Under the pieces are notes generated by a model. That model was not told where the DNA came from and ran no database searches. It worked only from the letters and a program-made list of their open reading frames with translations. A program made the position numbers and the translations under genes. A stretch of DNA of 64,000 nucleotides from Macrostomum lignano (Eukaryota), in NCBI GenBank assembly GCA_002269645.1, contig NIVC01003764.1, positions 1-64,000 on the forward strand, read 5' to 3'. This document shows positions 2,213-53,342 of the stretch, in pieces (the first letter of the stretch is position 1; each line of letters opens with the position of its first letter).

Positions 2213-3937
2213 ATGGCGACGAAGATGGCAGACTTCAGTTTCAACCCACCAACGCCGTACCTGGCTAGCCCGGGCGAGCCAAGCTGCCCGTGGCCAAGGT
2301 GGAAAAGTCAGTTCGCGATCTATTCAACGGCAACGGAACTGGACAAAACGTCGGAGGCGAAACAAATTGCCGTCCTTCGACACTGCCTCGCGCCGGAGGG
2401 CCAACGGCAGGCGGAAAGCGTGGAGGCGAACGACATGAAGAAACTGCTCGAAGAAATGGACAAAATCTTCGTGCCGAACAAGAGCGTCATCGGAGCTCGC
2501 TACAGGTTTCGGTGCAGGGAGCAGCGACCAGGGGAGCCGGTGCAGCAGTTCGTCAGAGATCTGCAGCAGCTCGCGGCCGATTGCGCGTTCAAGGACCTGA
2601 CGAAGGAGATGGTCCGCGATCAGCTTATCGAGAAAACGTGCATGCCACGTATCCGTGAGAGGCTGCTGATGGAACCAGACGACCTGACATTGGAGAAGTC
2701 CCTGCAGCTCACCAACCAAATCGAGACGGCCATCAACGAAGCCAAGGTCCTCAACGGCATATCAGGGGCGTCTCAAAAGACAGTGCACGCCGTCTCAAAG
2801 CAGAAAGTCAGAGCCAAGCCCAAAACGCGCAAGGACAGCGAGAAGTGCAGGCGATGCGGCGGCGACTACAGCAAGAAGCACAAGTGCCCGGCAATGGGAA
2901 AAACGTGCAAAAACTGCCGTAAACTGAACCACTTTGCCGCTGTGTGCCGAAGCAAGACGGTGGCGACAGTCGGCGAGGAGGTGAGCACCATCCTGCAAGT
3001 CGCGAACCAGGATCCGACTGCCGTCCACAACATCGAATGCGCGGTCCGCGACGAGCTGCTGACGCTGACGCTGGACAGCGGTGCCTCCGTGTCGGTGATC
3101 AGCATGTCCGACTTCCAGAGAGTTCGACGACACGCAACCAAGGGAAGCGGACCACCAGCACGGTTCGTGGCCTACGGAGGCTCGCACATCAGGACCTACG
3201 GGACAGCGACGCTCCCGGTCACGTTCAAGGAAAAGACGGCCTCGGTCTGTTTTCATATCACCGAGGGCAGCTCAAGCCTTCTTGGGCGTTCCGACTTCTC
3301 GAAGTTTGGTGTGTCTCTTCAAATTAACCATCTCGGTGACGAGGGCTCACAACTCCAGGACAACTCCAAGGACCTCTTCGAGTCGATCAGGCAACAGTCC
3401 AGCACGCCAGCAGGAGCCTGGGAGGAGCTGCAGCTCGAAATCTGCGGAGAGTTCAGAGCGGCGCCGCGTCACCAGAGATTCGTGATCCTGCTCATCGATC
3501 AGTTCAGCCGATGGCCAGAAGTCGCGCTCGTAGAATCGGTCACAACCAAGGTAGTCGTCGACTTCCTCGAGGTCATCTGGTCGAGGTGGGGCATCCCGAA
3601 GAGCATCACAACCGACAATGGACCCCAGTTCGGTCGAGAGTTCGACGAGTACCTGGCAAGCCTGGCGATCGAACACAAGCGAACGGCAGTGTACTGTCCA
3701 GAACAAAACGGCAACGTCAGGCGATTCAACCACTTGGACACACTTAGTGACAGCGCACTTGGTCGCCGGGTGGACCTTCTGCAAGGCGGTCCGAGCTGTC
3801 GTCGCGGCCTACAGGGCGACCCCAACGCACGTCATGGGTTCGAGTCCACACGAGCTCATGACTGGCCGACCAATACGCACCCCGCTGCTCGCACTCCAAC
3901 CGGACTCGGAAGCCAAGCGGACGACGTCAACTCATGA
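2213..3937 (+). CDS. Gag-protease-integrase core fusion ORF (574 aa) of the Gypsy element; integrase C-terminus continues in shifted frames to about 4349
   Basis: Gag with CCHC knuckles (CRRCGG..HKC, CKNCRKLNHFAAVC); aspartic protease LDSGASVS; integrase core LIDQFSRW and TTDNGPQF. After about 3735 another frame gives YRATP..SPHELMTGR and KLEPKLAGPFRV, and a further frame gives the LRRSEHERRLP tail. Confidence 0.85.
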   Translation: MATKMADFSFNPPTPYLASPGEPSCPWPRWKSQFAIYSTATELDKTSEAKQIAVLRHCLAPEGQRQAESVEANDMKKLLEEMDKIFVPNKSVIGARYRFRCREQRPGEPVQQFVRDLQQLAADCAFKDLTKEMVRDQLIEKTCMPRIRERLLMEPDDLTLEKSLQLTNQIETAINEAKVLNGISGASQKTVHAVSKQKVRAKPKTRKDSEKCRRCGGDYSKKHKCPAMGKTCKNCRKLNHFAAVCRSKTVATVGEEVSTILQVANQDPTAVHNIECAVRDELLTLTLDSGASVSVISMSDFQRVRRHATKGSGPPARFVAYGGSHIRTYGTATLPVTFKEKTASVCFHITEGSSSLLGRSDFSKFGVSLQINHLGDEGSQLQDNSKDLFESIRQQSSTPAGAWEELQLEICGEFRAAPRHQRFVILLIDQFSRWPEVALVESVTTKVVVDFLEVIWSRWGIPKSITTDNGPQFGREFDEYLASLAIEHKRTAVYCPEQNGNVRRFNHLDTLSDSALGRRVDLLQGGPSCRRGLQGDPNARHGFESTRAHDWPTNTHPAARTPTGLGSQADDVNS

Positions 3938-7044: not shown

Positions 7045-8395
7045 ATAAGCCTAGCCCCATCCCTAGTCCTGACCCTAGCCCTAGCTCTACTTAGCCCTAG
7101 CCTTAACCTTAGCAGCCATAGCCATAGCATTAGACAAAACTCTAACAATAGTCCTGGCCCTGGCACTAGCTTGGCTATAGCCCTAGCCCAGCCCTACCCT
7201 AGCAATAGCCCTAGCTTAGCCCTAGCTTGAGCTCAAGCCCCAGCCTAGCCCCAGCTCAAGCTCTAGCCACACTACAGCCCCAGCAGCCAGCTCCAGCTTA
7301 AGCTCAATCACCAGCCCAGCCTAGCCCTAGCCCTAGCCTGTACTCTATCCTAGCCCCAGCCCTACCCCACTCTATCCCAGCCCCTACTCTAGCCCTAACC
7401 CTAGCCCCTGCCCCTGCCCTAGCCCCAGCCCTACCCACCCCAGCCCCAGCCCTACCCACCCCAGCCCTACCCCACTCCAGCCCCAGCCCTACCACACCCT
7501 AGCCCCTGCTCTAGCCCCAGCCCTACCCCATCTCAGCGCCAGCCCTACCCCATCCCAGCCCCTGCTCTAGCCCCAGCCCTACCCCACCCCAGCCCCAGCC
7601 CTACCCCATCTCAGCGCCAGCCCTACCCCGCCCCAGCCCCAGTCCTACCCCACCCCAGTGCCAGCCCTACCCTATCTCAGCGCCAGCCCTACCCCATCCC
7701 AGCCCCTGCTCTAGCCCCAGCCCTACCCCACCCCAGCCCCAGCCTTACCCCACTCCAGCCCCAGCCCTACCCCACTCCAGCCCCAGCCCTACCCCACTCC
7801 AGTACCCCACTCCTACCCTACCCCAGCCCCAGCTCTACCCCACCCCAGCCCTAGCCCTACCCCACTCCAGCCCCAGCCCTACCCCACCCGAGCCCCAGCC
7901 CTAGCCCATCTCAGCGCCAGCCCTACCCCATCCCAGCCCCTGCTCTAGCCCCAGCCCTACCCCACCCCAGCCCCAGCCCTACCCCATCTCAGCGCCAGCC
8001 CTACCCCGCCCCAGCCCCAGCCCTACCCCACCCCAGCGCCAGCTCTAGCCCCAGCCCAGCCCTACCCCATCTCAGCGCCAGCCCTACCCCGCCCCAGCCC
8101 CAGCCCTACCCCACTCCAGCCCCAGCCCTACCCCACCCCAGCCCCAGCCCTACCCCACCCCAGCGCCAGCTATAGCCCCAGCCCTACCCCACCCCAGCCC
8201 CAGCCCTACCCCATCTCAGCGCCAGCCCTACCACATCCCAGCCCTAGTCCTACCGCACCCCAGTGCCAGCCCTACCCCATCTCAGCGCCAGCCCTACCCC
8301 ATCTCAGCGCCAGCCCTACCCCATTCTAGCCCCTGCTCTAGCCCCTGCCCTAGCCCCAACCCTAGCTCCTGCCCTAGCCTTGGCCCTAGACCCCA
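7045..8395. repeat. C-rich satellite built from AGCCCT/AGCCCC and ACCCC modules
   Basis: Repeated ccagccctaccccaccccagcc; the opposite strand is rich in G-runs. Confidence 0.9.
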
Positions 8396-9590
8396 CAGCA
8401 CTGGCCCTTTCACTATCCTAGCCCCAATCCCAGCAGAATTCTACTTCTTTGACTCCTGCACATCTGCACCCCTGCACTCCCTGCACCCCGTGCACTCCAC
8501 ATGTACTGATTGTATTTTTATGAATGCTTTTTACTTGTTGCTTTAATCACTAATTCCTCCCAGGCAGTCCTTCTAGGCTATCTTTCCTAGGCAGCCCCCC
8601 AGGCAAACCTCTCAAGGCAGCTTTCCCAGGCAAACTCTCCTAGTCAAACCCTTCAAGGCAGCCTTCCCAGACTACCCCTCCCAGACAGCCCTCCCAGACA
8701 GCCAACAAACAACCAACCAACCCAAACTTGTTGAATAAGTTTCATGTATTTTATACAAAATAGCCTAGTAGTTTTATGTATTTTACAATTTGAAAAATCC
8801 TTATATTGTATACATTTGGCTGTCAATTTTATTTTGTTTATTACCGACTAGCAGACTAATGACTTACATTCGAAGTTACCACTCTTTTACCCTATGGATT
8901 TGTATAAATTAGATGTAACCTGTATAATTATTAAAGTATTTTTTGAAGTTTTGATTGATTTATTTTGAGGTTCATTATAATTTTGAAAGATTTTAGAAGA
9001 TCCATAGGCTATGTAAATTATAGTAATTCAATATAGAATATAGCTTTAGGTTCATCCTACAATGAGATTTTCATGCAAATTGTCTAAGCATACATTAAAT
9101 TCTCGTCAATAATAGTAAACATGTTGTGATAAATGAGCATAAAAAATATTTTTAGGTCATAATTTAGATAAAATTAAAAATAAACAGACAAAATATTAAT
9201 ATTTATTTTTATGTATTTCATCTAGTCTAGACATTGTTAGGCTAGGCCTAATTTTTTATATATTTTTCGAGCTTATACTTGTATACAAGATTAAAAGGTT
9301 TATTTAAAGGAATAAATGTATTCAGCTTTTATGCTTTCAATCAGCATTATCCACTTTGTAAATATAAAACATCCTTTAATAAATACTTTTGTTTCAACAA
9401 ATCATCAATTTATCAGAAAATTGATTGATAAGTTGGTTTTGAATTTATAAACAAGCTAATAATGATCCAAAGTACTCTCAGAAACATGCTAACATTTTAG
9501 ATTTTTATGATAATATTAATGATTTACTATGTTATGACTTTTATGATATAATTACCTAATAATTGCAGCATTTGTTGAACAATAGCAGAC

Positions 9591-12500
9591 ATGTCAGATG
9601 GCAAGAATGCAAATTTCCATGTCACTGCCAGTCAGCACCTGTCCAATGCAATTCAGTCACTAGAGCGCCTTGCACTGGAAGTTGACCCCGATGAAGCTAT
9701 CATCTCAGGTCTCGATGGGGAAGCTGCCTGGCTATCAGCGGAGCTGCGAGACATTCGACAGCGACTTCGGGATGCTCGCCTTCGAATGCACTCGCCGCGC
9801 CTGCTGCCACCAGTGCCTGCTGTGCCTTCGCATCTTGAGGTTAATTCTCGAATATTTTAGAAGCTGAAATGAAGGGAAGAGTCGCTCAGCTACCCTCTGG
9901 TCAAGAGACTCTCTACTCTCTAGCTTTGGGGGCTGGCCCTACAACTCACTAGTGAATAGCGACTCTGTGACGATTCTTGCGACTTTTTAACGACTCAAAC
10001 GCGTCTAATGCGTCAAAGAGGCGACTGTTGCGTCACAAGCGCGTCACGTGACTTGCAGAATCGTGAAAGAGTTGTCCAAGAATCGTTGTTTTTGTCTTTA
10101 ACTTTCTACTAACTCAGTAGGCTTGTTAGAGTGCAATTAGAGTTCAATGGGCTACATTCGGTGTTTATGGCGTAACTGTAACTCTGACTCTTCTAATGCG
10201 GTTAGTGCGTCTCAGAAGTGGCGCACTAAAGACTCTACAGCGACTCCAGCACGCCTCAAGTACGACTCTACCGCTCCAAAGTCGTTTCACAGTCGCAGAC
10301 AATAAAACGCTTCAAAGTGACTTTTAGGCGACTCTTTGGTGACTAGATTCTCATGGGTTTGGGCGGCAGATTCTCATGGGTTTGGGTGGCAGATTCTCAT
10401 GGGTTGACTGGCAGATTCTCATAGGTTGATTGGCAGATTCTCATGGGTTGAGTGGCAGATTCTCATGGGTTGAGTGGCAGATTCTCATGGGTTGATTGGC
10501 AGATTCTCATGGGTTGAGTGGCAGATTCTCATGGGTTTGGGTGGCAGATTCTCATGGGTTGAGTGGCAGATTCTCATGGGTTTGGGTGGCAGATTCTCAT
10601 GGGTTTGGGTGGCAGATTCTCATGGGTTGAGTGGCAGATTCTCATGGGTTGATTGGCAGATTCTCATGGGTTGAGTGGCAGATATTCTCATGGGTTGAGT
10701 GGCAGATTCTCATGGGTTGAGTGGCAGATTCTCATGGGTTTGGGTGGCAGATTCTCATGGGTTGATTGGCAGATTCTCATGGGTTGAGTGGCAGATTCTC
10801 ATGGGTTGAGTGGCAGATTCTCATGGGTTGATTGGCAGATTCTCATGGGTTGAGTGGCAGATTCTCATGGGTTTGGGTGGCAGATTCTCATGGGTTTGGG
10901 TGGCAGATTCTCATGGGTTTGGGTGGCAGATTCTCATGGGTTTGGGTGGCAGATTCTCATGGGTTGAGTGGCAGATTCTCATGGGTTGATTGGCAGATTC
11001 TCATGGGTTGAGTGGCAGATATTCTCATGGGTTGAGTGGCAGATTCTCATGGGTTGATTGGCAGATTCTCATGGGTTTGGGTGGCAGATTCTCATGGGTT
11101 GATTGGCAGATTCTCATGGGTTGAGTGGCAGATTCTCATGGGTTGAGTGGCAGATTCTCATGGGTTGATTGGCAGATTCTCATGGGTTGAGTGGCAGATT
11201 CTCATGGGTTTGGGTGGCAGATTCTCATGGGTTTGGGTGGCAGATTCTCATGGGTTTGGGTGGCAGATTCTCATGGGTTTGGGTGGCAGATTCTCATGGG
11301 TTGAGTGGCAGATTCTCATGGGTTGATTGGCAGATTCTCATGGGTTGAGTGGCAGATATTCTCATGGGTTGAGTGGCAGATTCTCATGGGTTGATTGGCA
11401 GATTCTCATGGGTTGAGTGGCAGATTCTCATGGGTTGAGTGGCAGATTCTCATGGGTTGAGTGGCAGATTCTCATGGGTTGATTGGCAGATTCTCATGGG
11501 TTGAGTGGCAGATTCTCATGGGTTTGGGTGGCAGATTCTCATGGGTTGAGTGGCAGATTCTCATGGGTTTGGGTGGCAGATTCTCATGGGTTTGGGTGGC
11601 AGATTCTCATGGGTTTGGGTGGCAGATTCTCGTGGGTTGATTGGCAGATTCTCATGGGTTGATTGGCAGATTCTCATGGGTTGAGTGGCAGATTCTCAAG
11701 AGTTGGGTGGCAGATTCTCATCGGTTGAGTGGCAGATTCTCATGAGTTTGGGTGGCAGATTCTCATGGGTTGAGTGGTAGATTCTCATGGGTTGAGTGGC
11801 AGATTCTCATGGGTTGAGTGGCAGATTCTCAAGAGTTGAGTGGCAGATTCTCATGGGTTGAGTGGCAGATTCTCATGGGTTTGGGTGGCAGATTCTCATG
11901 AATTGAGTGGCAGATTCTCATGGGTTGAGTGGCAGATTCTCATGGGTTGAGAGGCAGATTCTCATGGGTTTGGGTGGCAGATTCTCATGGGTTGACAGGC
12001 AGATTCTCATGAATTAAGTGGCAGATTCTCATGAATTGAGTGGCAGATTCTCATGGGTTGAGTGGCAGATTCTCATGGGTTGAGTGGCAGATTCTCATGG
12101 GTTGAGTGGCAGATTCTCAAGAGTTGGGTGGCAGATTCTCATGGGTTGAGTGGCAGATTCTCATGGGTTGAGAGGCAGATTCTCATGGGTTTGGGTGGCA
12201 GATTCTCATGGGTTGAGTGGCAGATTCTCATGGGTTGAGTGAGACTCAACTAGCGCTGTTCAACCAACCCCAATCAGGGCATCGGCAGCATCTTCAAGAA
12301 GCAGCGAAACGGCGATCTCAAGATTCGGCCGGACGCCACCATCCCAGAGCTGTGCACCTCAATCAGACTGTTGAATCACGTCAAGATGTCTCTGCTCGGT
12401 CGCAGACCAAGTCTGTCTGAGCCGCCAGACACTGCAGACGTACCCGAAGGTGTTCTGTCCGGTTGGCGGCAGATGTTCGCCAGCCCATTGGCGGACATTG

Positions 12501-15407
12501 TCAAAGGCGGCTTGGCCAAGTCTCTGCTCGACTGGCACGCTGAATTGCTGGCTGAGTGTGACAGAGCGGAGGAGCTGGAAGCTGCGGGCTGCTCAGAAGA
12601 GAATAAAAATGTAATTATCGATTTGTTTCTATTTGTTTTCTTATGTAGTTTTATTATCTACCGATGTCATGGATTATTTTAGGAAAAATAATCTTTAGCT
12701 TGATTAGACAGTAGATTAGGAATATTAGGTTTGCATTAGGGGAACTCGTAGGTTATTAGGTATTGAATTAGGGGAACTCATAGGCTATTAGGTATTGAAT
12801 TAGGGGAACTCATAGGCTATTAGGTATTGAATTAGGGGGAACTCGTAGGTTATTAGGTATTGAATTAGGGGAACTCATAGGCTATTACATGTAGGTATTG
12901 AATTAGGGGAACTCATAGGCTATTAGGTATTGAATTAGGGGAACTCATAGGCTATTAGGTGTTGGATTAGGGGAACTCATAGGCTATTAGGTATTGAATT
13001 AGGGGAACTCATAGGCTATTAGGTATTGAATTAGGGGAACTCATAGGCTATTAGGTATTGAATTAGAGAAACTCATAGGCTATTAGGTATTGAATTAGAG
13101 AAACTCATAGGCTATTAGGTATTGAATTAGGGGAACTCATAGGCTATTAGGTATTGAATTAGGGGAACTCATAGACTATTTATTGCTCGTAGGCCAATTT
13201 GAATACCAACTATAGGATTACGAGTAAAATTAAACAATTGACAGCCCAAAGACGCTGCCGCAGCCCGTCGCGCTCTGCTATCGTCGCAGTCGGCCGCCGA
13301 CGAGGCCGCCCTCGCCGACTGGCGTTGGACAGAAATTTTGGCGCCCCTGATGCCGCCCAAGTCAGCGCCAGATTCGGCGCCGGCTGTCGACTTCAAGTCG
13401 GCTCTGGTGTTCGCCGGTCTGCCCGCAGATCTGCTGCCATCAAGTTTGTCCACCGGCTCCTGGCGACTGGAGCTGGCGGCCTGTGCCGGCAGCCGGATGT
13501 ACGGCCTGAGCACCCCGCAGTCGGATGTGGACTACCTGCTGGTGTACAGCCGGAGGGATGAGTTCAGGCACCTGCGGCATCCCCCAGACACAACCGAATC
13601 CAGGGGACCGGATAAGACCGTGAGTGAGCTCTTGATCCCTAATCCTCCTTAATCCTCACGCCTCCTAATCCTCACGGCTCCTAATCCTCACGGCTCCTAA
13701 TCCTCACGGCTCCTAATCCTCACGGCTCCTAATCCTCACGGCTCCTAATCCTCACGGCTCCTAATCCTCACGGCTCCTAATCCTCACGGCTCCTAATCCT
13801 CACGGCTCCTAATCCTCACGGCTCCTAATCCTCACGGCTCCTAATCCTCACGGCTCCTAATCCTCACGGCTCCTAATCCTCACGGCTCCTAATCCTCACG
13901 GCTCCTAATCCTCACGGCTCCTAATCCTCACGGCTCCTAATCCTCACGGCTCTTAATCCTCACGGCTCCTAATCCTCACGGCTCCTAATCCCTAATCCTA
14001 CTTAATCCTCACGGCTCTTAATCCTTTCCCTAATCCTCACCACCCATAATCCCAGATCGAGTTCGGTTGCTGCGAAGCGGCAGAGTTCGCCCGGCAGTTG
14101 CTCAGGGGCAGCATAGTGCAGCTGGAGCTGCTGTTCGCACAGCCGGCCGCTCGGCTGTTCGTGTCACCCGCCTTCGACTGGCTGCTGCAGCGGCGGATGC
14201 GTCTGGCCACGGAGAACTTCATCAGGCAGCTGCTGGGACTGGCGAGTCAGCTGGTCAGGACGCTGAGCAAAGCGGAGGTGCTTGGCAATAGTTTAAACTT
14301 GGTGATTTAGAGTTTGGAGCTTAGTGAATTAAAGTTTGGAGCTTAGTGAATTAGAGTTTATAGCTTAGTGAATTAGAGTTTAGGACTTTAGTGAATTAGA
14401 GTTTAGAGCTTAGTGAATTAGAATTTAGCTTGTACAGTTGACGTTGCAATCTCCACCCATCGCAGGTCAACCCAGACCAGTTCCCACCAGCCGAGGCCCG
14501 CAAGGTGGGCAAGGCTGCCTACCAGCTTGAGCACAAACTCAACCTTCTGACTGACCTGGCCGCGGGCATCGAACCCCGAGTCACCCTGGAGGGTGCCGAG
14601 CGCGAGCGAGTGCTGGCTCTGAGATCAGCTGACTGGGCCGACCCTGCCAGCAGGCGGGCACTGGCTCGGGCCTCACTCGACAGGTAAGACGTTTTAAAGC
14701 TCTTTATGTGAGGCTGTTTGACCTTCTAATGTATCCTAGTGCACTGGGACCTTGAAATGTCACCTGATTGAAATTGCAACCTTCAGGTGTTAACAGATTT
14801 AAAAAGGACCTTCAAATACTTTAAATTATCGCCTCTTGGAGACAATGGTCCTTCAAATATCACCTGGTAGAGAATATAAGTTTAGTGTCTCTTGGTTAAA
14901 ACTTAGACATTCAAATGTTACATAGTTAAAGCTTTGACCTTCAAATGTCACTTCGTTAAAGTTTTGACCTTCAAATGTCACTTCGTTAAAGTTTTGACCT
15001 TCAAATGTCACTTCGTTAAAGTTTTGACCTTCAAATGTCACTTCGTTAAAGTTTTGACCTTCAAATGTCACTTGGTGGAGAATATGACCTATGCTTAGGA
15101 CCATATCACACGTACCTGATGTCATCTGATTAAAGCAGTGACCTTCAAATCTCACCTGGTTAAAACTAGCACCAGGTAGTCATCAGGTGGTGACTTTAAC
15201 CTTCATATGTCACCCAGTAGAATCTCTCCTGTGACTTTTAAACTAGTTTTTCAACCTTCAAAAACGTTCTATCCCAGGCACAGAGCAGTTAAACAAACTC
15301 TGGCATCGCGAAGCAGCCGGCTGGCTGAGAACTGCCCGACAGATTTTCTCACCGACTGGCTGCAAGTTGTGCACTTTGGGAGCCACATCTCCGAGGCTGA
15401 GTCTTGA
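9591..15407 (+). CDS. Six-exon gene encoding an RlaP/YcgL-like (Pol-beta superfamily) nucleotidyltransferase, about 508 aa
   Basis: Exons 9591-9839, 12278-12610 (alternative in-frame acceptor at 12254), 13245-13619, 14056-14277, 14466-14683 and 15278-15407, all GT-AG with matching phases (0,0,0,0,2). Catalytic motif AGSRMYGLSTPQSDVDY, then EFARQLLRGSIVQLELLF, SPAFDWL..RR, KAAYQL..KLNLL...AAGIEPRV.LEG.ERE.VL and FLTDWLQVV, the layout of the COG3541/PF10127 family as I recall it. Confidence 0.8.
10345..12240. repeat. 22-bp minisatellite (GGCAGATTCTCATGGGTTGAGT)n in intron 1 of the NTase gene
   Basis: About 85 tandem units with variants. Confidence 0.95.
12735..13170. repeat. 32-bp minisatellite (TTAGGGGAACTCATAGGCTATTAGGTATTGAA)n, NTase intron 2
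   Basis: Tandem units read directly. Confidence 0.95.
13636..14040. repeat. 16-bp minisatellite (CTCCTAATCCTCACGG)n filling NTase intron 3
   Basis: Near-perfect tandem units between donor 13620 and acceptor 14055. Confidence 0.95.
14306..14425. repeat. 22-bp repeat (TTAGAGTTTGGAGCTTAGTGAA)n, NTase intron 4
   Basis: About 5 diverged units. Confidence 0.85.
14920..15070. repeat. 30-bp repeat (TCAAATGTCACTTCGTTAAAGTTTTGACCT)n, NTase intron 5
   Basis: 4-5 near-identical units plus decayed flanks. Confidence 0.9.
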
Positions 15408-15597
15408 TACTCAGTGTGACGTCTGTTAGTCGTACAATCATAGTTCCGCTTATATTTATGGCTAATAAACACTTATTCAATTGTGATAAATATGAATAAA
15501 ATTATGTTTATGATTGTATTTATACGCTCGCATTTTATAATTTATAATAAAAAGATTTGCTTTCATGGTCAATTCTGCTGTGATAAATTTTTTAGAT

Positions 15598-17311: not shown

Positions 17312-20300
17312 CTACAAGTCTGTGGTCAGATCTCTTCCACGAGAAGCCGTTTGAGTAGTGTGAGTATCGGTTGGCATCTTGTCCAGCATCCAGCCTCCAT
17401 TGTCGATGGTTGCCGGGCCAACCAGGCATTGAAATCGCAGGCCGGTGTTGCCATCCACCGGCTGAATCGTCTCCGCCCGGAACTCCAGGCCGCTATTGGC
17501 GAATTCCTGGGCGGAGGCGAACAGTTTCGGATGATGATGCCGAAGGCTGACAACGCGACGCGTCAGGTCGCGTTGCAACGCTGTCAGATTATTTCGTCTT
17601 CCAGCCCGACGCTTCTCCTGCTCCAGCTCGTTGCTCGACGTTGTCGCCGCGTCGTCGACGCACCGGACGACAGTCCAGCAGCGAAGCAGCGGGCCGCCAT
17701 CGTCACCAGTGTTGCGCGTCTGCGGGTAGCTGCTCGCCAGGGGGAGGGCGGCGCAGAGAACGAAAGTCGAACCTTGCATCGACGAGCTGCGGTCGGCTTC
17801 GGCAACGGTAGCGACGGATGCGTCAGGGTCCGCCTCTGCAGCCGGGTCGCTCCACGGCAGGAAGGTTGGCGGACGCAGCAGGGTCGGGATGTTGCTGTTG
17901 CTGCTGCTATTGTTGGACATAGAGACTCCGGATAGGACTAACTGGACGCAGCCACCGCTGTCTGCAGAGACGTTCGAAGCTCCTCGCTTAGCCAGTCGAG
18001 CCAGTGGCGGCCCGGCTCGACACGCTGCTCGTCTCAGAGCCGACCGGCAGGCGGCCAGCTGGCGGTCGAAAGCGCAGACGCGACTGTGCGCTGCCCAGTG
18101 CGCTCGACGGCAAGGGTCTGAGCAGTAGCCGACTGTGGCGCAGTTGGGGCAACCGCAGGGACAGCCGCCGTCGCCGCCACTGACGCGACTGCATCGCAGG
18201 TTGCAGCAGCGCCCAATAGCCGACGGAGCTGCTGGCAAAGCTAGCGAATCTGTTGGCTGAGTCTCCGACTTCCGCGCCGACTTCTTGGCGATACAGAACA
18301 GGGCAGCTGCTTCGTCCGCCGTTCGAGACTCGTCGTTGGAAAGTTGCGCGTTTCTACGATCGATCGACTGCAGCAGCGTTCGAGTCTCGGACATCCGGGT
18401 CAGACCGGCTTCGTAGCTCGGCGCCTCGGCGGGACCTTCAGCTAGGAATTTAACGGCTGCTTGTTCTTCTGACTGATGATTTTTCTGGTCTACGGCGTCT
18501 TTCAATCCGGTGGCGTGGACTGCGAGTGAAGAGGACCTCGTTGGTGGCGGCGGAGGCGGCGGCTTGCTGGACGTCGATAAGGTGACTTGACTCGGCTGCG
18601 GCTTCGATGAAAAGTCACTTGGTCGCAGAGTCAGAGTCAGCAGCGGAGGCGGCGGAGGCGTCGGCCGCAGTTGATCTGTTTTACTGACGTCTCCGTCAGG
18701 TGTTCGGCTGTCTAAGCTGCTCTGTTTGATGTAGCGCCTCGGCTGCGAGCCGCTCTCAGTCGACTGGTGTTTCTTGGGTTGCACCAGCTGTTGCGGCTCG
18801 GCTTGTAGACGGTTTGTCATCCCGGCTGGCAGGCTGACAAACTTTGGCATGATGAGCACCGCCCTTGACACCTGATTGGTTGCGGCCGAATCGGACATCG
18901 TTGGGGTTGCTGACGTCACAGACGAAGCCGCTGATGCTGTTGCCACCGCTGCGGCCGCTTCTGACTGAACTTTTCGTCGCCATGGATGTTGCTGTCTCTC
19001 GCCAGGTTGCTTCTGGCGGTCCCAGCATGCCGCTACCGACTGCGGCCGTCCACTGTCGCCGCCATCGCCCAATGGCAAACTGTCAATCCAGTCGGGTAGG
19101 TCAAGGCGCGACAAGGATCTGTGTGCATGACAACGGGAGAGTTTGAAATAATCATGCCTAATCCCGATCCCTGATCCCGATCCCTGATCCCGATCCCTGA
19201 TCCCGATCCCTGATCCCGATCCCTGATCCCGATCCCTGATCCCGATCCCTGATCCCGATCCCTGATCCCGATCCCTGATCCCGATCCCTGATCCCGATCC
19301 CTGATCCCGATCCCTGATCCCGATCCCTGATCCCGATCCCTGATCCCGATCCCTGATCCCGATCCCTGATCCCGATCCCTGATCCCGATCCCTGATCCCG
19401 ATCCCTGATCCCGATCCCTGATCCCGATCCCTGATCCCGATCCCTGATCCCGATCCCTGATCCCGATCCCTGATCCCGATCCCTGATCCCGATCCCTGAT
19501 CCCGATCCCTGATCCCGATCCCTGATCCCGATGACTCACCTACAGATGACCTTCTCGCTCTCAGATTTCGCCCTGGCCTCCAGCCTCTCGATGAAAGTTG
19601 GATGGCACCTGGTCTGAAGTGCTCGCTTCGACTGGCCCGCTGGCTGCTGCCTCTGCCGGTACCTGTCGCCTCCTTTTCTGCTGCCTCTGTCGGCAAGCAG
19701 GTCTTCGCTGGCCGCCCGACCGACTTCTTCCCGGCTTTCGCCGAGGCCTCCAAGATCGGCCAGGCTGCTGGCGCCTCGACGATTAACTGCGCCGATTTCG
19801 TCTAAGTTTGTCTCCGCGAAGGCTTCAACAGCGGCAGCCTCCATCAGGCAGCGGTGCAGTTCGTACAGCGACACGGACTTGCTGTCCTCGCCGCGATCTG
19901 TCAGCGGCGAGTCAGTCGGCGATTCGTCGGCATCTCTAGCGGCATCCAGATCAGTTGATTTGAATCGGCGGCGCCAAAATTCTCGCCGCTGCGCTACCAG
20001 TGTCGGCGGTGGCACCGGCGGCGGCGCCGAGCTCTGGCCGGCGAAGATTCGCAAGGCGTCTTCGTCGCTCATCAAGTGTCGCAGCTCGTAGCCGCGGTGA
20101 CTGTCGGAGCTCAGGGGCTGCTGCTGTACAATGGTCGCTTGAATCGGTGTTAGCAGCGGCTTATCGTCGTCTGGTGATGAGTCGCTGCTGTCCGGAATGA
20201 AGGCCGCCTCCACGGTCAGCGCTGCAATTGGCGGCGCCGCGTCAGTTGTCGCCGCGGCGCTCTCCTTAGCGCTCAACTCCTCTAGCTGACGCTTCAGGCT

Positions 20301-22190
20301 CAGCAGGCGCTGCTGGTGCAGCATCGACTCTGAAGACAAGGCATCCGGGTGACTGCTTCTGCACGCCAGAGACGGCAGCGGCGAGGACGGCGGCGGTGGC
20401 GGTGGCAGCAGCGGCTTCAGGGTCGACGGCGGAAACGTCGCCGAAGGCTGCATTATTGACTCGAGGCCGCCGCCGTCGACACCGACGCCGAAGTAGCCCT
20501 GAGCTGGAGTCCCGACCGCTGACGGGCTCACTGTGCAGGACGTGGAAACCAGAATGTGCAGCAGCTGTGGCTGCGATGCTACTGTCGCAGTCTCGCTGTT
20601 CCGACCGTCGAATCCGTTGAAGTTGCCGCCAACTGCACGGACGATGCCTACGGCGCTGTTGGCGGCGAGCCCGGCCGCTCTAGCCGTCGCCCTGGCAACG
20701 GCGGCTCCGGCGCTGGCTGCGCTGGCCTCCGACGTGACGACGCCAGGCTGTTCCTCGGTGCGGCTGTTGATCCAGCTGCCGTTGTAGTCGGTGACTCTCG
20801 CGCTGGAGGACGCGATGGCTCTGACTGCGCCGGCCAGCTCTGCGGAGGAATCGGCCAGTAATAAATAAACGCATTTTTAAAGGGGCTGGTGCAGTCGAGG
20901 TTTTCATAGCGGGCACTATGGATGCCATAAACTTTTGCCGCTCTTAGCTCGTACCTGGCTACGCGCACCTCCTCATTTCAATTGAGCGTTATGTACTTTT
21001 TTCTGCGTCTCTGGGTGAAGCGTTTTTTTCATCTATATTTACAAACTAACTCTTTGCAAAGGCAGAGAGTCTTAGCAAACTTGTCTCAATCAAGTCAGTT
21101 ACTTTCTTTCTGCTCCAATTATCTCCTAAGTCGAAGGGATTAGGGAGACAGTCACGGGAGAGGAAGGCCTACACGAGTGTCATTTGTTCCTAATTAATCG
21201 ATTGGCTCGTACTATGGGTCCGAGCCAATTAAGTTCTTACTCAATTCTGTATCCATTATGTACTTCCGTAGACAGCCATACCTTTCGGGGCTGCATGCCT
21301 GCGTACAGTACTGACGCGCTTGCATGTGAGTCAGCGGAATGTTCAGATGTCGCCGAAGGCTTTGCGCCAGGGTACCCGCAACTTTCCAGCGAATATTTAT
21401 TTTAGCTCGTACTTATCATTAGCGCTAAAACTACGGCAGTTTGATTTACCTTCTGGCCGCCTTTTAGTGTACTGCATGATCGCATTTGACTCCTCTGCAT
21501 TGTTGCTGTCTTCTTCTGGATCGATCACGTCTGACTCTGCCGACTTGCCAGAAGCTGCTGTCAGCAAGCGCAAGCCTGTCTGACACAGACTCGGATCCGA
21601 GCAGCTGCGGGTCGGGTGCTTCGTCAGCGATCTGCAGCACTCAGTCGGCTGGAAGCCTCTGCCGCAGCTGCCACCGCCGCCGCCGCCGCAGCCGCCACAG
21701 CGGCCTCCTCAGCGATGGCTCCAAGGCGTCGACAGCCGCTACTTGCGCGGCTTTGTCTGCCATTTCGCAGCAGAATCTGCTGCTGCCGGTGCTGCTGCTG
21801 CAGTCGGCGTCGGGCTTCGCGTCGGACGTCGCGTCGGGCCGTCACAGCCGAGGATGCAGCCGCCGCGGCCGTCTGCGGATGTAAGTCCAAGAGGTCCAGG
21901 TCGTCCTGTGAGAGCACTGGCAGTCGCTGCTTGAAATCGACAGTAAAAGCGTTCACAACCGCGGCTGTCGCAGCTTTTGCCGCTGCAGCCGCCGGCGCGT
22001 CAGCTGGCCACTCCGCGTCGCTGGACTCGCTAGACTCCGATGAAGTCGAGTACTCGATGGCCTCGGCGTCGGGCTCATGCAGCCAGGGCCGTCGCAGCCG
22101 TTGCCGATGGGCTCTTGGTTGGTGTTGCTGCTGCTGCTGCTGCTGAGGCTGTTGCTCCTGCTTCGGGGATACAGCAGATTTAGAGGTCCC
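17312..22190 (-). CDS. Large low-complexity protein with C-terminal MYND-type zinc finger, AJM1 (apical junction molecule)-like; 5' structure unresolved
   Basis: Phase-consistent exons: ...-21450, 20839-19540 and 19157-17312 (stop). The C-terminal exon has CPNCATVGYCSDPCRRAHWAAHSRVC followed by LARLAKRG..GGCVQLVL, PTFLPWSD and FVLCAALP, resembling the AJM1/C9orf172 C-terminal domain as I recall it. An upstream Gln/Ala-rich frame (about 22190-21624) needs one extra base to join the downstream frame. Confidence 0.6.
19161..19532. repeat. 13-bp minisatellite (GGGATCGGGATCA on the minus strand) forming almost the entire intron 19158-19539
   Basis: About 28 perfect units between donor GTGAGT (19539) and acceptor TTAG (19158). 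Confidence 0.95.
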
Positions 22191-32272: not shown

Positions 32273-35200
32273 ATGGCCGGTTCTTCCTCTGGCGCTCGGC
32301 TGTTGCTTTCGTCGCCGAAAATTGCACGCAACCTGCTGAGCTTGTCGATGTCATTCCTGCTGATGTTCACCAGCTACCAGGGCCTGGCATCGTTGCAGAG
32401 CTCCATCAACTCAGTTGGCGGCCTGGGTACGGCGGGCCTGGCGGTAACTTACGCTTGCGTGGTGCCTTCGTCGCTTCTGGTGTCGCCGTTGGCTTTGGAC
32501 TGGCTGGGTGCCAAGCGGACAATGCTGCTCGGGATGCTGGGCTACGTCATCTATTTCCTCCTGAGCTTGGCGCCTGGCTGGGCCACCATCATACCCGGCT
32601 CGGCTCTGCTGGGTCTGTGCGGAGCGCCGCTCTGGGCTGGAATGAGTTTGTACACTGTGCAGCTCGCTGCCATTGCGGACGCCGAGGCTGCGGCTGACGA
32701 CAAAGGACGTCAGAATAATGGCGATAAAGGCGGCAAAAAAGTTGCCACTTTGCCAGTGTTCTTCGGAGTCTTCTTTACAATAGTTACCAGCTGTGAGTTC
32801 TCGCGCTATCGGCCGGGGGCTGTCGTTTCTGACCACGGTACGATCTTGGCAAAGGCGTTGCGCCAGGGAGTTCCCTCAGACCTGTAAATATTGACAGAAT
32901 TTACAGTAAGCGCTTTCTTGCTGGCTGGGTTTCGACTGCCTTGTAGATTTGCGGCAGTGCCCAACGCACTCTGGTGAACTCGGGAACTATTGTAATTAAA
33001 TTTCATCTTTGGTGGACATGGATTGCCAAATATACAAAAGCTATGATTTTTCACCAACCCCAGGCAATATTTGGGGCAACTTGATCTCATATTTGACGCT
33101 GGTGGATCGCAGTGATGGAGGCGTCTCCAACTCAACAGCCGCTATCAGCAATTTCAGCTGCGGCTATCGCTTTTGTCCAGCGAAACCGGCTGCTGGAGCA
33201 GAAGCACCCACCAGCGACGCCGAAGTGGAGGCGCTTGGACCCGGCGGGCTGCCCGCTGTGAAGGTGTGAAAAATGCCGAATTTAAGATTAAAGAAGAAAG
33301 CTTATTTCAAACTTTTTAACTTCAGTCCCCATGAGTGCACTACAGCAATGCATACCCACAGCACCATTGACAATTCTAGAGCACCACTGACATCCCAGAG
33401 CACCACTGACAATCCAGAGCACCACTGACATCCCAGAGCACCACTGACATCCCAGAGCACCACTGACATCCCAGAGCACCTCTGACATCCATGGAGCACC
33501 TCTGACATCCCAGAGCGCCCAGAGCACCACTGACATCCTAGAGCATCACAGACATCCCAGAGCACCACTGACATCCCAGAGCACCACTGACATCCCAGAG
33601 CACCACTGACATCCCAGAGCACCACTGACATCCCAGAGCACCTCTGACATCCATGGAGCACCTCTGACATCCCAGAGCGCCCAGAGCACCACTGACATCC
33701 TAGAGCATCACAGACATCCCAGAGCACCACTGACATCCCAGAGCACCACTGACAATCCAGAGCACCACTGACATCCCAGAGCACCACTGACATCCCAGAG
33801 CACCACTGACATCCATGGAGCACCTCTGACATCCCAGAGCGCCCAGAGCACCACTGACATCCTAGAGCATCACAGACATCCCAGAGCACCACTGACATCC
33901 CAGAGCACCACTGACATCCCAGAGCACCACTGACATCCCAGAGCACCACTGACATCCCAGAGCACCACTGACATCCCAGAGCACCACTGACATCCCAGAG
34001 CACCTCTGACATCCATGGAGCACCTCTGACATCCCAGAGCGCCCAGAGCACCACTGACATCCTAGAGCATCTCAGACATCCCAGAGCACCACTGACATCC
34101 CAGAGCACCACTGACAATCCAGAGCACCACTGACATCCCAGAGCACCACTGACATCCCAGAGCACCACTGACATCCCAGAGCACCACTGACATCCCAGAG
34201 CACCACTGACATCCCAGAGCACCACTGACATCCCAGAGCACCACTGACATCCCAGAGCACCACTGACATCCCAGAGCACCACTGACATCCCAGAGCACCT
34301 CTGACATCCATGGAGCACCTCTGACATCCCAGAGCGCCCAGAGCACCACTGACATCCTAGAGCATCACAGACATCCCAGAGCACCACTGACATCCCAGAG
34401 CACCACTGACATCCCAGAGCACCTCTGACATCCATGGAGCACCTCTGACATCCCAGAGCGCCCAGAGCACCACTGACATCCTAGAGCATCACAGACATCC
34501 CAGAGCACCACTGACATCCCAGAGCACCACTGACATCCCAGAGCACCTCTGACATCCATGGAGCACCTCTGACATCCCAGAGCGCCCAGAGCACCACTGA
34601 CATCCTAGAGCATCACAGACATCCCAGAGCACTATTGACATCCTCAGTCCTTTTTCATCCCTAGTCCACTATGAGTTGTTGTTAATGACAGATGGAACAC
34701 TTTTCGAATATTATGTAGCCATCTTTACTCCGTTAAATTAAATATCCATTTCAGTTTTACACACTGATGTCCTGTTTCATCGCAACAGCAGTGGTCTCCG
34801 TGCTGGTGATGTTCTTCCTCGTAGATCGAAACGATCCACCGAAAAACGAGGAGCCAGTCAAAGCCGGAACGCAGCAGCAAGTCTCTCAACTGTTAGAGAG
34901 GCTTCGTAAAGCGCTGGCTCAATTGGTGGATCCGAGGCAATTGCTTCTGGTGCCTTTGACCATCAATGCTGGACTGTCACAGGCTTTCTCACTCGGTGAC
35001 TTTACTGAGGTTTGAGACACGCGAAGCTTAAGTTGTTTAATCGACCCGTATCGTTTGCCTGACATTGATGTACATCGCTGGCGAATGGGTATTTTTACAT
35101 TACGTCGGCTAACGACAAGGTTATACGGCGGCAAAACGTCAGTGTAGCGTAATACGAGCTAGTACCCACTTCGAGTGGGTTTTCTAATAGCCCCCTTTAG

Positions 35201-37535: not shown

Positions 37536-40382
<2,847 letters not shown>

Positions 40383-49865: not shown

Positions 49866-50399
49866 AGACAGACAGGAGAGCAGTTCGGGCAGAATTTGAA
49901 TGACGGCTAGGCAGCCTTGAGAAGAATGCCATACACGGTTCAGGTGCCAGTTCCATACCTAGAGTCTGCGTGCTTCCTAATTTTGCCAAGATCGTTCAAC
50001 TTCAGCTATCGTGACTCTGACCCTGAATTCACCAGTCAGCTCATCTCACCACCCAGACCTTTTGCCCCTCAATCTTCTAAGGTTTTTTTATATTCTCAAA
50101 ATCGCAAAGCAGCAAGACGACCCAGAGAGGTTCAAGCAAAGACCAGGAAGAGGCTAAAGATTGCATTGTTGAGTTGCTTTTAGCTCACGGGCTGATGGAG
50201 CGCAGAGGAGACTGCAAGCTTCCGGTGAGGCCGTTCTTCCACTCTGGTAGCTATTATATAAAAATATTACGGGCCCGACCCGTTGCAGTGAGGAAGTCAG
50301 GGGGGACAAAAGTTGATTCCATGCAGGCTTCTTCCAGAAAATTAATTCTCTGCGTGCCACGGGATGGTAGAAGCCACGGCTTTTGGCTTTTGTATAGCA

Positions 50400-53303: not shown

Positions 53304-53342
<39 letters not shown>

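What the first reader, a model, noticed from the sequence alone, without database searches (positions are those of the whole stretch)
9591..15407. Intron-containing animal gene for an RlaP/YcgL-type nucleotidyltransferase, a family known mainly from bacteria and phages
Seen: six exons, invisible as one ORF, splice in phase into a ~508-aa protein with an intact G-S-x9-S-D-x-D motif (GSRMYGLSTPQSDVDY) and the downstream LL.G....LELLF, SP.F..L and K..Y....LL......G..P.V.L.G.ERE blocks. Established: this is the layout of the Pol-beta-superfamily COG3541/PF10127 (YcgL, RlaP) family, which comparative genomics has linked to RNA repair in prokaryotic conflict systems. Inference: a domesticated (ancient or horizontally acquired) enzyme with no characterised animal function, possibly in RNA end repair or modification, or nucleotide-based immunity. 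Uncharacterised invertebrate homologues may already exist in databases.
Basis: partly seen in the sequence, partly recalled or inferred. Interest (0 to 1): 0.85.

Follow-up and report, generated by a model that had tools for sequence, protein, structure and literature searches.

The report
Flatworm RlaP-type RNA nucleotidyltransferase gene
This is a real, transcript-annotated six-exon gene of the flatworm Macrostomum lignano that encodes a divergent, shortened member of the RlaP nucleotidyltransferase family; the family is mostly bacterial and phage, but this copy belongs to an old, uncharacterised animal branch (sponges, molluscs, annelids and others), so it is a new member of a known kind and not a recent gene transfer.

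Summary
Six GT-AG exons (9591-15407, + strand) splice in phase into a 508-aa protein. It is 100% identical to GenBank PAA49903.1 (BOX15_Mlig000355g4), a hypothetical protein of Macrostomum lignano from a transcript-derived annotation.

The family call also holds, though not on first look. The protein misses Pfam RlaP/PF10127's cut-off (18.4 vs 23 bits). Its closest relatives all pass it, and a profile-profile comparison with short RlaP proteins gives 100% probability (E 1.6e-41) over the whole domain.

The catalytic G-S-x9-S-D-x-D motif and the downstream acidic residues (E321, E326) are intact. Two genomic copies differ by 6 synonymous and 1 non-synonymous change.

The closest relatives are animal proteins of about 610 aa in bivalves, gastropods, a chiton, a brachiopod, annelids, a nemertean and sponges. 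They carry a dead RlaP-like module in front of the active one. The flatworm lost the core of the dead module and shares none of the 10 intron positions common to a limpet and a sponge.

Most likely function, inferred only: adding one or two nucleotides to RNA 3' ends, as shown for bacterial RlaP. Conventional eukaryotic nucleotidyltransferases and recent transfer are rejected. Interest is moderate.

The parts
9591..9839 (+). Exon 1 (aa 1-83). It holds the start ATG, preceded by an in-frame stop at 9576-9578. The peptide is helical and corresponds to the N-terminal about 60 aa of the animal RlaP family.
   Evidence: It matches the N-terminal profile of 35 animal orthologues at 10.0 bits, above all 1000 shuffles (maximum 5.8).
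9840..12277 (+). Intron 1 (2438 nt, GT-AG). It is mostly a 22-mer tandem array (10345-12241, about 85 copies).
12278..12610 (+). Exon 2 (aa 84-194). It is the remnant of the helical half of the degenerate first RlaP module (GIGSIFKKQ...CTSIRLLNHV).
   Evidence: tblastn with animal orthologues starts at 12275. Alignments. Module 1 of the orthologues aligns with the RlaP profile at 97.4% probability, E 1.1e-11.
12611..13244 (+). Intron 2 (634 nt), with a 32-mer tandem array at 12723-13180.
13245..13619 (+). Exon 3 (aa 195-319). It holds the linker and the start of the active NTase core.
13488..13535 (+). Catalytic motif GSRMYGLSTPQSDVDY (G276, S277, S287, D288, D290).
   Evidence: S287 and D290 are invariant, and G276, S277, Y280 and D288 are at least 90% conserved, across 66 homologues.
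13620..14055 (+). Intron 3 (436 nt), with a 16-mer tandem array at 13645-14025.
14056..14277 (+). Exon 4 (aa 320-393). It contains E321 (14059-14061, which aligns with the third catalytic Asp of short RlaPs), E326 (14074-14076), LLRGSIVQLELLF (14098-14136) and SPAFDWL (14164-14184).
14278..14465 (+). Intron 4 (188 nt), with a 67-mer repeat at 14290-14427.
14466..14683 (+). Exon 5 (aa 394-466, ending inside a split codon). It encodes the helical domain with the K409..Y412..H416K417 ... P430 ... R446 block (14511-14606).
14684..15277 (+). Intron 5 (594 nt, phase 2), with a 30-mer tandem array at 14886-15073.
15278..15407 (+). Exon 6 (aa 466-508 plus the TGA stop). It encodes the C-terminal helix (DFLTDWLQVVH), which in RlaP packs back onto the NTase domain.
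   Evidence: The domain architecture is described in PMC12776372.
15464..15469 (+). AATAAA, a candidate polyadenylation signal 57 nt after the stop codon.
   Evidence: read from the sequence; function inferred.

Best explanation
SHOWN. This is a genuine nuclear gene of the flatworm Macrostomum lignano: PAA49903.1, at 9591-15407 of contig NIVC01003764.1. Its C-terminal 250 residues are a complete RlaP-type (PF10127, Pol-beta superfamily) module, made of a nucleotidyltransferase core and a helical domain with an intact metal-binding triad (D288, D290, E321). It belongs to an animal branch of the family that dates back at least to the common ancestor of sponges and bilaterians. In that branch a catalytically dead RlaP-like module sits in front of the active one. 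In M. lignano the core of the dead module has been deleted and all ancestral introns have been replaced by five lineage-specific, tandem-repeat-filled introns. The gene is under purifying selection.

INFERRED. By homology with the biochemically characterised Pseudomonas RlaP enzymes, the protein binds an NTP with two divalent metal ions in the cleft between the two domains. It then transfers one or a few NMPs, without a template, to the 3'-OH of an RNA. The likely substrates are damaged or trimmed RNAs such as tRNAs, restoring nucleotides before religation (in animals presumably by RTCB) or marking the RNA end. The RNA substrate, the nucleotide specificity and the pathway in animals are untested.
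For: Gene model and identity:
- Six GT-AG exons give a 508-aa product that is 100% identical to PAA49903.1.
- The annotation is derived only from transcripts.
- A paralogous copy on another contig keeps the same exon structure and the same AJM1_C neighbour.
- The two copies differ by 6 synonymous and 1 non-synonymous change: pN/pS 0.06, binomial p 0.0016.

Family membership:
- 60 of 66 phmmer homologues match PF10127.
- The ten closest relatives score 31.7-77 bits against a cut-off of 23.
- hhalign of the animal clade against short RlaP proteins gives 100% probability, E 1.6e-41, over 225 columns that cover profile positions 6-232 of 251.
- 36 of the 50 columns that are at least 90% conserved in the animal active module are kept, including every catalytic residue.

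Structure:
- The AlphaFold model of the domain has pLDDT 91.1 and pTM 0.89.
- Its best viral matches are phage nucleotidyltransferases, with E down to 2.7e-10 and TM up to 0.75.

Function by homology:
- Pseudomonas RlaP adds 1-2 NMP to RNA 3'-OH and prefers damaged RNA (PMC12776372).
- Some protist relatives fuse RlaP modules to a YTH RNA-binding domain, which points to RNA substrates in eukaryotes.
Against: - The protein itself falls below Pfam's gathering score (18.4 vs 23 bits). It has no NCBIfam or PADLOC hit.
- Several positions conserved in its relatives are changed (Y325C, E332R, M333Q, I341Q, R498H). It is the longest branch of the animal clade.
- The third catalytic residue is Glu, not the Asp reported as strictly conserved in bacterial RlaP.
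- There is no RNA ligase or other RNA-repair gene next to it, and animals have no operons to give such context.
- No biochemical or expression data were examined directly.
- The closest solved structures are not RNA-tailing enzymes. They are HalB (a protein-primed oligo-dA synthase) and antibiotic nucleotidyltransferases.
Confidence: 0.6

Rival explanations
1. Nucleotide-signal or oligonucleotide synthase in immunity. Like HalB of the bacterial Hailong system, the enzyme would make short template-independent oligonucleotides, possibly primed on its own tyrosine, that regulate an effector. It would not repair RNA.
For: HalB chains are the top PDB matches of both models (E 4.5e-5 to 3e-4, TM 0.45-0.55). 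HalB biochemistry is summarised in PMC13434031. A tyrosine (Y280) next to the G-S motif is nearly invariant in the family.
Against: No sequence-level relation to HalB could be detected: a profile search of the PDB found no true hit. TM scores are only about 0.5. Phage RlaP-type proteins match far better. The only characterised family members act on RNA. No PADLOC defence model matches, and there is no candidate effector next to the gene.
Confidence: 0.12
2. Catalytically weakened or regulatory protein. The flatworm copy would be a degenerating or RNA-binding-only derivative, as its N-terminal module already is in other animals.
For: The Pfam score is below threshold. It is a long branch. 14 of 50 highly conserved columns are changed, part of the protein is deleted, and all ancestral introns are lost. 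The family has a precedent for dead modules.
Against: All metal-binding and motif residues are intact. pN/pS between the copies is 0.06. The reading frame is intact in both full-length copies. The model of the active domain is confident.
Confidence: 0.12
3. Small-molecule or protein nucleotidylyltransferase, like ANT(4') kanamycin nucleotidyltransferase or LinB, which share the same two-domain layout.
For: ANT(4'), LinB and AadA structures are among the significant Foldseek matches (E 1e-4 to 1e-2).
Against: Sequence identity is 11-16% and TM is at most 0.46. The Pfam and hhalign assignment is to RlaP and not to the ANT families. In the Pseudomonas study only RNA, among E. coli macromolecules, was a substrate.
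Confidence: 0.06
4. Recent horizontal transfer from a bacterium, phage or giant virus into Macrostomum, or assembly contamination.
For: The family is overwhelmingly bacterial and viral. Structural matches include phage, giant-virus and baculovirus proteins. The flatworm gene shares no intron position with other animals. A retrotransposon fragment lies 5.6 kb upstream.
Against: - The gene has five spliceosomal introns.
- A second copy has a conserved animal-gene neighbour.
- The best hits are all animal proteins (33-36% identity, E down to 3e-31).
- Exon 1 and exon 2 match parts of the animal-specific N-terminal region.
- The sequence falls in the animal clade of a neighbour-joining tree with 63% bootstrap.
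- A limpet and a sponge share 10 introns, which shows the family is old in animals.
Confidence: 0.03
5. A conventional eukaryotic nucleotidyltransferase (poly(A) polymerase, TUTase/Cid1, OAS/cGAS-Mab21, CCA-adding enzyme).
For: It has the Pol-beta-type G-S...D-x-D motif, and there is a weak NTP_transf_2 hit (E 0.08).
Against: PAP, TUT4, Cid1, Pla1 and CCA-enzyme structures score E 0.08-0.5 with probability about 0.1. No Pfam hit to PAP, TUTase, OAS or Mab-21 families was found for this protein or its relatives.
Confidence: 0.01

Closest known systems
Bacterial RlaP (PF10127), e.g. Pseudomonas fluorescens and P. aeruginosa RlaP encoded in RtcB-RtcA operons (Carruthers, Fatma and Huang 2025, PMC12776372)
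   Same: It has the same domain from end to end: an NTase core, a helical domain and a returning C-terminal helix. The motifs also match: G-S-x9-S-D-x-D, (K/R)G..x..ELLF, K..Y(H/Q)..(R/H)(L/K)L, G.ER and W(L)..V(R/H). hhalign gives 100% probability, E 1.6e-41.
   Different: - This is a eukaryotic, intron-containing gene with a 250-aa N-terminal extension.
- The third acidic residue is Glu, not Asp.
- KGNP is replaced by RGSI.
- It has no RNA-ligase neighbour.
- Its own Pfam score is below the cut-off.
- Its activity is untested.
Uncharacterised animal PF10127 proteins of about 610 aa (e.g. Mytilus californianus XP_052084005.1, Lymnaea stagnalis CAL1546317.1, Lottia gigantea LOTGIDRAFT_233515, Lingula anatina LOC106178780, Ephydatia muelleri KAL5460428.1)
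   Same: These are the closest relatives (33-36% identity, E down to 3e-31). They share the N-terminal helix, the helical part of module 1 and the whole active module. They also share clade-specific motifs such as ESRGP..(I/V)E(F/Y)G and (K/R)GS(V/I)V.LEL.
   Different: The flatworm protein is about 110 aa shorter. It lacks the core of the dead first module: 13 of 30 conserved N-terminal columns are deleted. It has two lineage-specific insertions. It shares none of the 10 intron positions conserved between Lottia and Ephydatia.
Phage RlaP-type nucleotidyltransferases (the T4 NrdC.11 group and jumbo-phage RlaP; the structural matches here were to Enterococcus phage Sw5, Bacillus phages Mater and BCD7, and Streptomyces phage BRock)
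   Same: These are the best structural matches available (Foldseek E 2.7e-10, TM up to 0.75). There is also direct tblastn similarity: 30% identity, E 4e-5 to the BRock nucleotidyltransferase.
   Different: The phage proteins have a single module of about 230-290 aa and work alongside phage RNA ligases (PMC7824862). The animal gene has no such genomic partner.
HalB of the Hailong anti-phage system (PDB 9dbh, 9dbi, 9dbj)
   Same: It is the closest solved structure in the PDB copy searched, with the same minimal NTase-plus-helical-bundle layout.
   Different: TM is only 0.45-0.55 at 13-17% identity, with no detectable sequence relationship. HalB makes protein-primed oligo-dA that gates an ion channel.

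Membership tests
RlaP / PF10127 (Pol-beta superfamily) | Score against the Pfam PF10127 model at or above the gathering cut-off (23 bits) | tested here: not met
   The M. lignano protein scores 18.4 bits, E 0.0019, over aa 271-347 only. Its ten closest relatives score 31.7-77.2 bits.
RlaP / PF10127 (Pol-beta superfamily) | Homology over the full RlaP domain, shown by transitive and profile-profile search | tested here: met
   phmmer links it to animal PF10127 proteins at E 3e-31. 60 of 66 homologues hit PF10127. hhalign gives 100% probability, E 1.6e-41, over profile positions 6-232 of 251.
RlaP / PF10127 (Pol-beta superfamily) | Catalytic signature: a G-S motif, a [DE]x[DE] pair and a third acidic residue on a later strand | tested here: met
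   G276, S277, D288 and D290 are present. E321 aligns with the third Asp of short RlaPs (a conservative D to E change shared by all animal members). E326 is also conserved.
RlaP / PF10127 (Pol-beta superfamily) | Two-domain fold: an N-terminal NTase domain, a C-terminal helical domain and a last helix that rejoins the NTase domain (PfRlaP crystal structure) | tested here: inconclusive
   The AlphaFold model (pLDDT 91, pTM 0.89) has a beta-alpha core followed by long helices and a terminal helix. It matches phage RlaP-type models at TM up to 0.75. The PfRlaP structure itself was not in the PDB copy searched, so no direct superposition was possible.
RlaP / PF10127 (Pol-beta superfamily) | Genomic association with an RNA ligase (RtcB, Pnkp/Hen1 and others), which gave the family its name | tested here: not met
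   The neighbours are a retrotransposon fragment, an AJM1_C/MYND gene and an UNC-93-like gene. This criterion relies on operons and has little meaning in an animal genome.
RlaP / PF10127 (Pol-beta superfamily) | Template-independent addition of 1-2 NMP to an RNA 3'-OH | not testable with these tools
   This is known only for the Pseudomonas enzymes (PMC12776372).
Animal two-module RlaP clade (dead module plus active module, about 610 aa) | An N-terminal degenerate RlaP module with the motif TCPWY...ERGEQA.HN in place of G-S...D-x-D | tested here: not met
   The core is absent from the protein and was not found anywhere in the 64-kb window by tblastn. Only the N-terminal helix and the helical tail of the module remain.
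Animal two-module RlaP clade (dead module plus active module, about 610 aa) | Grouping with animal sequences in a tree of the active module | tested here: met
   In a neighbour-joining tree of 98 domains it falls in a 24-member clade with all named sponge and spiralian sequences (200 bootstraps, 63% support), on a long basal branch. This is a distance method only.
Animal two-module RlaP clade (dead module plus active module, about 610 aa) | Ancestral intron positions (10 shared by Lottia and Ephydatia) | tested here: not met
   None of the five M. lignano introns coincides with any of them.
Conventional eukaryotic NTases (PAP, TUTase/Cid1, OAS/cGAS, CCA-adding) | A profile or structural match stronger than the match to any other NTase family | tested here: not met
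   There are no Pfam hits to these families. Foldseek gives E 0.08-0.5 and probability about 0.1.

The most novel reading that the evidence does not exclude
Sponges, spiralian invertebrates and some protists have kept a dedicated RNA-end-restoring enzyme that vertebrates and the classic model ecdysozoans seem to lack. It is a fusion of a dead and an active RlaP module that would work with the tRNA ligase RTCB to rescue tRNAs or other RNAs trimmed by ribotoxins, stress nucleases or viral attack. The Macrostomum version would be a streamlined single-module form. M. lignano is transgenic- and RNAi-tractable, so it could be used to reveal the first animal RlaP-dependent RNA repair or antiviral pathway.
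Probability: 0.3. Interest if true: 0.65.

Novelty: new member of a known kind. Interest (0 to 1): 0.4.

Why it matters
RlaP was first given a biochemical activity in a December 2025 preprint, and only for bacterial enzymes. That preprint notes merely that "a small number" of family members are eukaryotic.

This analysis shows that the flatworm gene belongs to a conserved and apparently unstudied animal lineage of RlaP, one old enough for a limpet and a sponge to share 10 intron positions. If the animal enzymes also tail or repair RNA 3' ends, they would add an enzymatic step to animal RNA repair or quality control that has no vertebrate counterpart among the hits seen here. M. lignano offers RNAi and transgenesis to test this.

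The result is not a categorical surprise. The protein and its orthologues are already in public databases, and most of the orthologues already carry the PF10127 assignment.

Tried and rejected
- Direct family scans of the protein gave only a sub-threshold PF10127 hit in Pfam, nothing in NCBIfam and only a chance-level hit in PADLOC.
- Sequence searches of the PDB, with the single protein and with a 66-sequence profile, found no true relative. The de novo TIM-barrel hits are spurious matches to the variable N-terminal columns.
- The search for homologous proteins returned only the query itself, both with the flatworm protein and with an 8-sequence alignment headed by it. The likely reason is that low-complexity Ala/Pro-rich words filled the candidate list. 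The same tool with the Mytilus orthologue worked.
- tblastn of eight orthologues against the whole window found no exon for the missing dead-module core, either upstream or in intron 1.
- A first tree script timed out, and a second was spoiled by undefined distances. The capped-distance version was used.
- hhalign of the flatworm's mid-region alone against RlaP was not significant (probability 2%). Its assignment to the helical half of module 1 therefore rests on colinearity with the orthologues.
- The idea that the gene is a 5'-truncated retrocopy was considered, because all ancestral introns are gone and the N-terminal domain is missing. It was set aside because exon 1 still matches the family's N-terminus.
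- Burroughs and Aravind 2016 (the paper that named RlaP) is not held in the library.
- No paper mentions Mlig000355.
- Rfam and tRNA scans of the window found nothing.
Full report

Yes, exactly as stated. Between 9591 and 15407 on the + strand no single ORF spans the region. Six segments join through five GT...AG introns into a 1527-nt reading frame of 508 codons plus TGA. The segments are:
- 9591-9839
- 12278-12610
- 13245-13619
- 14056-14277
- 14466-14683
- 15278-15407

Four introns are in phase 0 and the last is in phase 2. An in-frame stop lies at 9576-9578, just upstream of the ATG. Exons are 55-66% G+C against 35-54% for the introns, and GC3 is 0.69.

**2. Where the window comes from**

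The spliced product is 100% identical over its full length to GenBank PAA49903.1, "hypothetical protein BOX15_Mlig000355g4" of the free-living flatworm Macrostomum lignano. The window is the first 64 kb of contig NIVC01003764.1 of assembly GCA_002269645.1, where the gene is annotated at exactly 9591-15407.

That annotation was built only from RNA-seq-guided and de novo transcript assemblies, with ORFs called by TransDecoder (PMC5730564). The junctions are therefore transcript-derived by construction. I did not see the reads themselves.

A second full-length copy (PAA67339.1) lies on contig NIVC01001491.1. It has the same six exons and the same downstream neighbour, an AJM1_C-domain gene on the opposite strand. 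The two coding sequences differ at 7 of 1527 positions, 6 synonymous and 1 non-synonymous (F250S). This gives pN/pS about 0.06, and a one-sided binomial test gives p = 0.0016. The introns differ in length because their tandem arrays have changed copy number.

The other recognisable elements in the window are a retrotransposon gag/integrase ORF (2213-3937), the MYND/AJM1_C gene (17312-21477, - strand) and an UNC-93-like ORF. This is an ordinary animal chromosomal locus and not a contaminant.

**3. What family is it?**

Taken alone, the protein is a borderline case. Pfam gives RlaP/PF10127 at 18.4 bits (E 0.0019, residues 271-347), under the 23-bit cut-off, and NTP_transf_2 at E 0.08. NCBIfam, PADLOC and sequence searches of the PDB give nothing meaningful.

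An exhaustive phmmer search of 1.84 billion representatives found 104 relatives with E up to 0.001. Of 66 aligned sequences, 60 match PF10127, the best at E 1.2e-43. The ten closest relatives all pass the cut-off, at 31.7-77.2 bits.

A profile of the flatworm protein plus seven animal relatives aligns to a profile of 22 short (220-260 aa) RlaP proteins with 100% probability, E 1.6e-41. The alignment runs over 225 columns and covers positions 6-232 of 251, which is the whole domain and not only the nucleotide-binding motif.

Across 66 homologues, S287 and D290 are invariant. G276, S277, Y280, D288, E326, G337, E343, L362, K409 and R446 are at least 90% conserved, and all are present in the flatworm protein.

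The third catalytic Asp of the short RlaPs aligns with E321, which is a Glu in all seven animal relatives aligned. The Pseudomonas study describes three strictly conserved Asp, so this is a conservative departure.

**4. Structure**

An AlphaFold model of the full protein has pLDDT above 90 for about residues 270-500 and is poor for 1-80 and 190-240. A model of residues 246-508, built with 76 aligned sequences, has pLDDT 91.1 and pTM 0.89.

Against predicted viral structures, the best matches are phage "nucleotidyltransferase" proteins, with E down to 2.7e-10 and TM up to 0.75 over about 245 columns. Giant-virus proteins and baculovirus HE65 proteins also match.

Against the PDB, the best matches are HalB of the Hailong defence system, ANT(4') kanamycin nucleotidyltransferase, LinB and the structural-genomics entry 3c18. 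These score E about 1e-4 with TM only 0.3-0.55. The PfRlaP crystal structure was not in this PDB copy.

Poly(A) polymerases, TUT4, Cid1, Pla1 and a tRNA-processing enzyme score E 0.08-0.5 with probability about 0.1.

**5. Who are the relatives, and how old is the gene in animals?**

The closest relatives are animal proteins:
- Mytilus (33% identity, E 3e-31)
- Lymnaea
- the sponge Ephydatia
- Capitella

A search seeded with the Mytilus protein found about 610-aa "uncharacterized proteins" that nearly all already carry PF10127. They occur in many bivalves and gastropods, a chiton, the brachiopod Lingula, the annelid Owenia, the nemertean Lineus and Ephydatia. Further relatives occur in the sponge Sycon and in protists (Diphylleia, Platysulcus, the dinoflagellate Effrenium).

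In a neighbour-joining tree of 98 active-module sequences, the flatworm protein falls on a long basal branch in a 24-member clade that holds every named animal sequence, with 63% of 200 bootstraps.

I mapped the exon structures of the Lottia and Ephydatia genes. These two share 10 intron positions with identical phase, so the gene was already present, with introns, in the common ancestor of sponges and bilaterians. This argues for ancient vertical descent with losses and against recent horizontal acquisition by the flatworm.

None of the named hits came from vertebrates, arthropods, nematodes or cnidarians. My sampling of names was incomplete, so I do not claim absence from those groups.

**6. 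What is peculiar about the flatworm copy?**

In the other animals, residues about 100-370 form a second, N-terminal RlaP-like module. This module aligns to the RlaP profile end to end (97.4% probability, E 1.1e-11). However, it has TCPWY...ERGEQA.HN where the G-S...D-x-D motif should be, so it is a dead module. Several protist relatives also show more than one RlaP-like module.

The flatworm protein keeps two parts of this N-terminal region:
- the family's N-terminal helix, encoded by exon 1, which scores 10.0 bits against the N-terminal profile, above all 1000 shuffles;
- the helical tail of the dead module, encoded by exon 2.

It lacks the core in between. 13 of the 30 conserved N-terminal columns are deleted, and tblastn finds no trace of the core elsewhere in the window.

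In the active module it keeps 36 of the 50 columns that are at least 90% conserved among 39 animal sequences. Most of the changes are conservative.

None of its five introns coincides with any of the 10 ancestral positions, and introns 2 and 4 sit at flatworm-specific insertions. All five introns carry tandem-repeat arrays. This fits a genome in which simple and tandem repeats make up 15% of the sequence.

**7. How it most likely works**

Shown: there is a complete RlaP-type domain with an intact metal-binding triad, and the gene is under purifying selection in an animal genome.

Inferred: by homology with Pseudomonas RlaP, the flatworm enzyme most likely transfers one or a few NMPs, without a template, to RNA 3' ends. 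Pseudomonas RlaP adds one or two NMP to the 3'-OH of RNA, prefers damaged RNA, and restores aminoacylation of over-trimmed tRNA after ligation (PMC12776372). This plausibly restores nucleotides before religation by the animal tRNA ligase RTCB. The RTCB link rests on general knowledge and was not tested.

The fusion of RlaP modules to a YTH RNA-binding domain in two relatives, one of them from the protist Platysulcus, supports RNA as the substrate class in eukaryotes.

Rivals:
- a HalB-like oligonucleotide synthase with a signalling role. HalB is the top PDB match, but only at TM about 0.5 and with no sequence link;
- a weakened or purely RNA-binding derivative;
- an antibiotic-type nucleotidyltransferase.

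I give the RNA 3'-end tailing/repair mechanism roughly even odds. The identity of the gene as an RlaP-family member is close to certain.

**8. Novelty and verdict**

- the direct Pfam score is sub-threshold;
- the origin is ancient and vertical, not a recent transfer;
- homologues are already numerous and family-tagged in the databases.

The 2025 RlaP preprint already notes a few eukaryotic members. I found no paper on animal RlaP, and no paper naming this gene.

This is a new, divergent member of a known kind. It comes with a modestly interesting evolutionary story: an animal-wide fusion of a dead and an active module, streamlined in the flatworm. The organism is also experimentally tractable. 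Interest 0.4.

Noticed in passing
window 9840-15277 (introns 1-5); L003 and L004 for comparison: Every one of the five introns holds a tandem-repeat array (22-mer x85, 32-mer x14, 16-mer x24, 67-mer x2, 30-mer x6). None of the five intron positions matches the 10 positions shared by the limpet and sponge orthologues. Introns 2 and 4 sit at flatworm-specific insertions. Array copy number differs between the two M. lignano copies.
   Followed up: partly
P0005, P0006, P0011, P0142 etc. (animal orthologues); corresponds to the gap between window exons 1 and 2: Animal RlaP proteins carry an N-terminal catalytically dead RlaP-like module (TCPWY...ERGEQA.HN in place of G-S...D-x-D). It is conserved from sponges to molluscs. 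I found no description of it in the literature searched.
   Followed up: yes
P0013 (Platysulcus tardus, 1025 aa) and one other homologue in alignment A1: Protist relatives fuse a YTH (m6A-reader type) RNA-binding domain to two or three RlaP modules. Another homologue carries a Methyltransf_24 domain.
   Followed up: partly
window 2213-3937 (+): A 574-aa ORF with an integrase core (rve, E 1.6e-12) and a weak retrotransposon gag match. It is an LTR-retrotransposon fragment 5.6 kb upstream of the gene and is not annotated as a gene in the record.
   Followed up: partly
window 17312-21477 (-): The neighbouring annotated gene (1044 aa, AJM1_C domain, with a MYND zinc finger in the largest exon) contains a near-perfect 13-mer x29 tandem array (19157-19532). 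The same gene flanks the paralogous RlaP copy on another contig.
   Followed up: no
window 32273-32887 (+): An ORF with an UNC-93 family match (E 4e-6), probably an exon of an UNC-93-like gene.
   Followed up: no
window 7325-8376, 33355-34643, 39456-40304, 45736-47286, 48643-49867, 50400-51497, 52141-53493, 57995-60094: There are many long tandem arrays (periods 4-24 nt, up to 2.1 kb, strongly strand-skewed in G/C). They create long spurious ORFs on both strands. Most ORFs over 150 aa in the second half of the window are artefacts of this kind.
   Followed up: no
window 9583-9593 and 15464-15469: An AG dinucleotide lies two bases before the start ATG (ATAGCAGACATG) and could be a spliced-leader trans-splice acceptor. 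An AATAAA lies 57 nt after the stop codon.
   Followed up: no
P0003 (PAA66164.1, 279 aa) and P0004 (269 aa): There is a third M. lignano locus or isoform that encodes only the C-terminal module, starting at MPPKSAP. There is also a database variant that skips two internal segments. Whether these are real short isoforms or annotation fragments was not examined.
   Followed up: no
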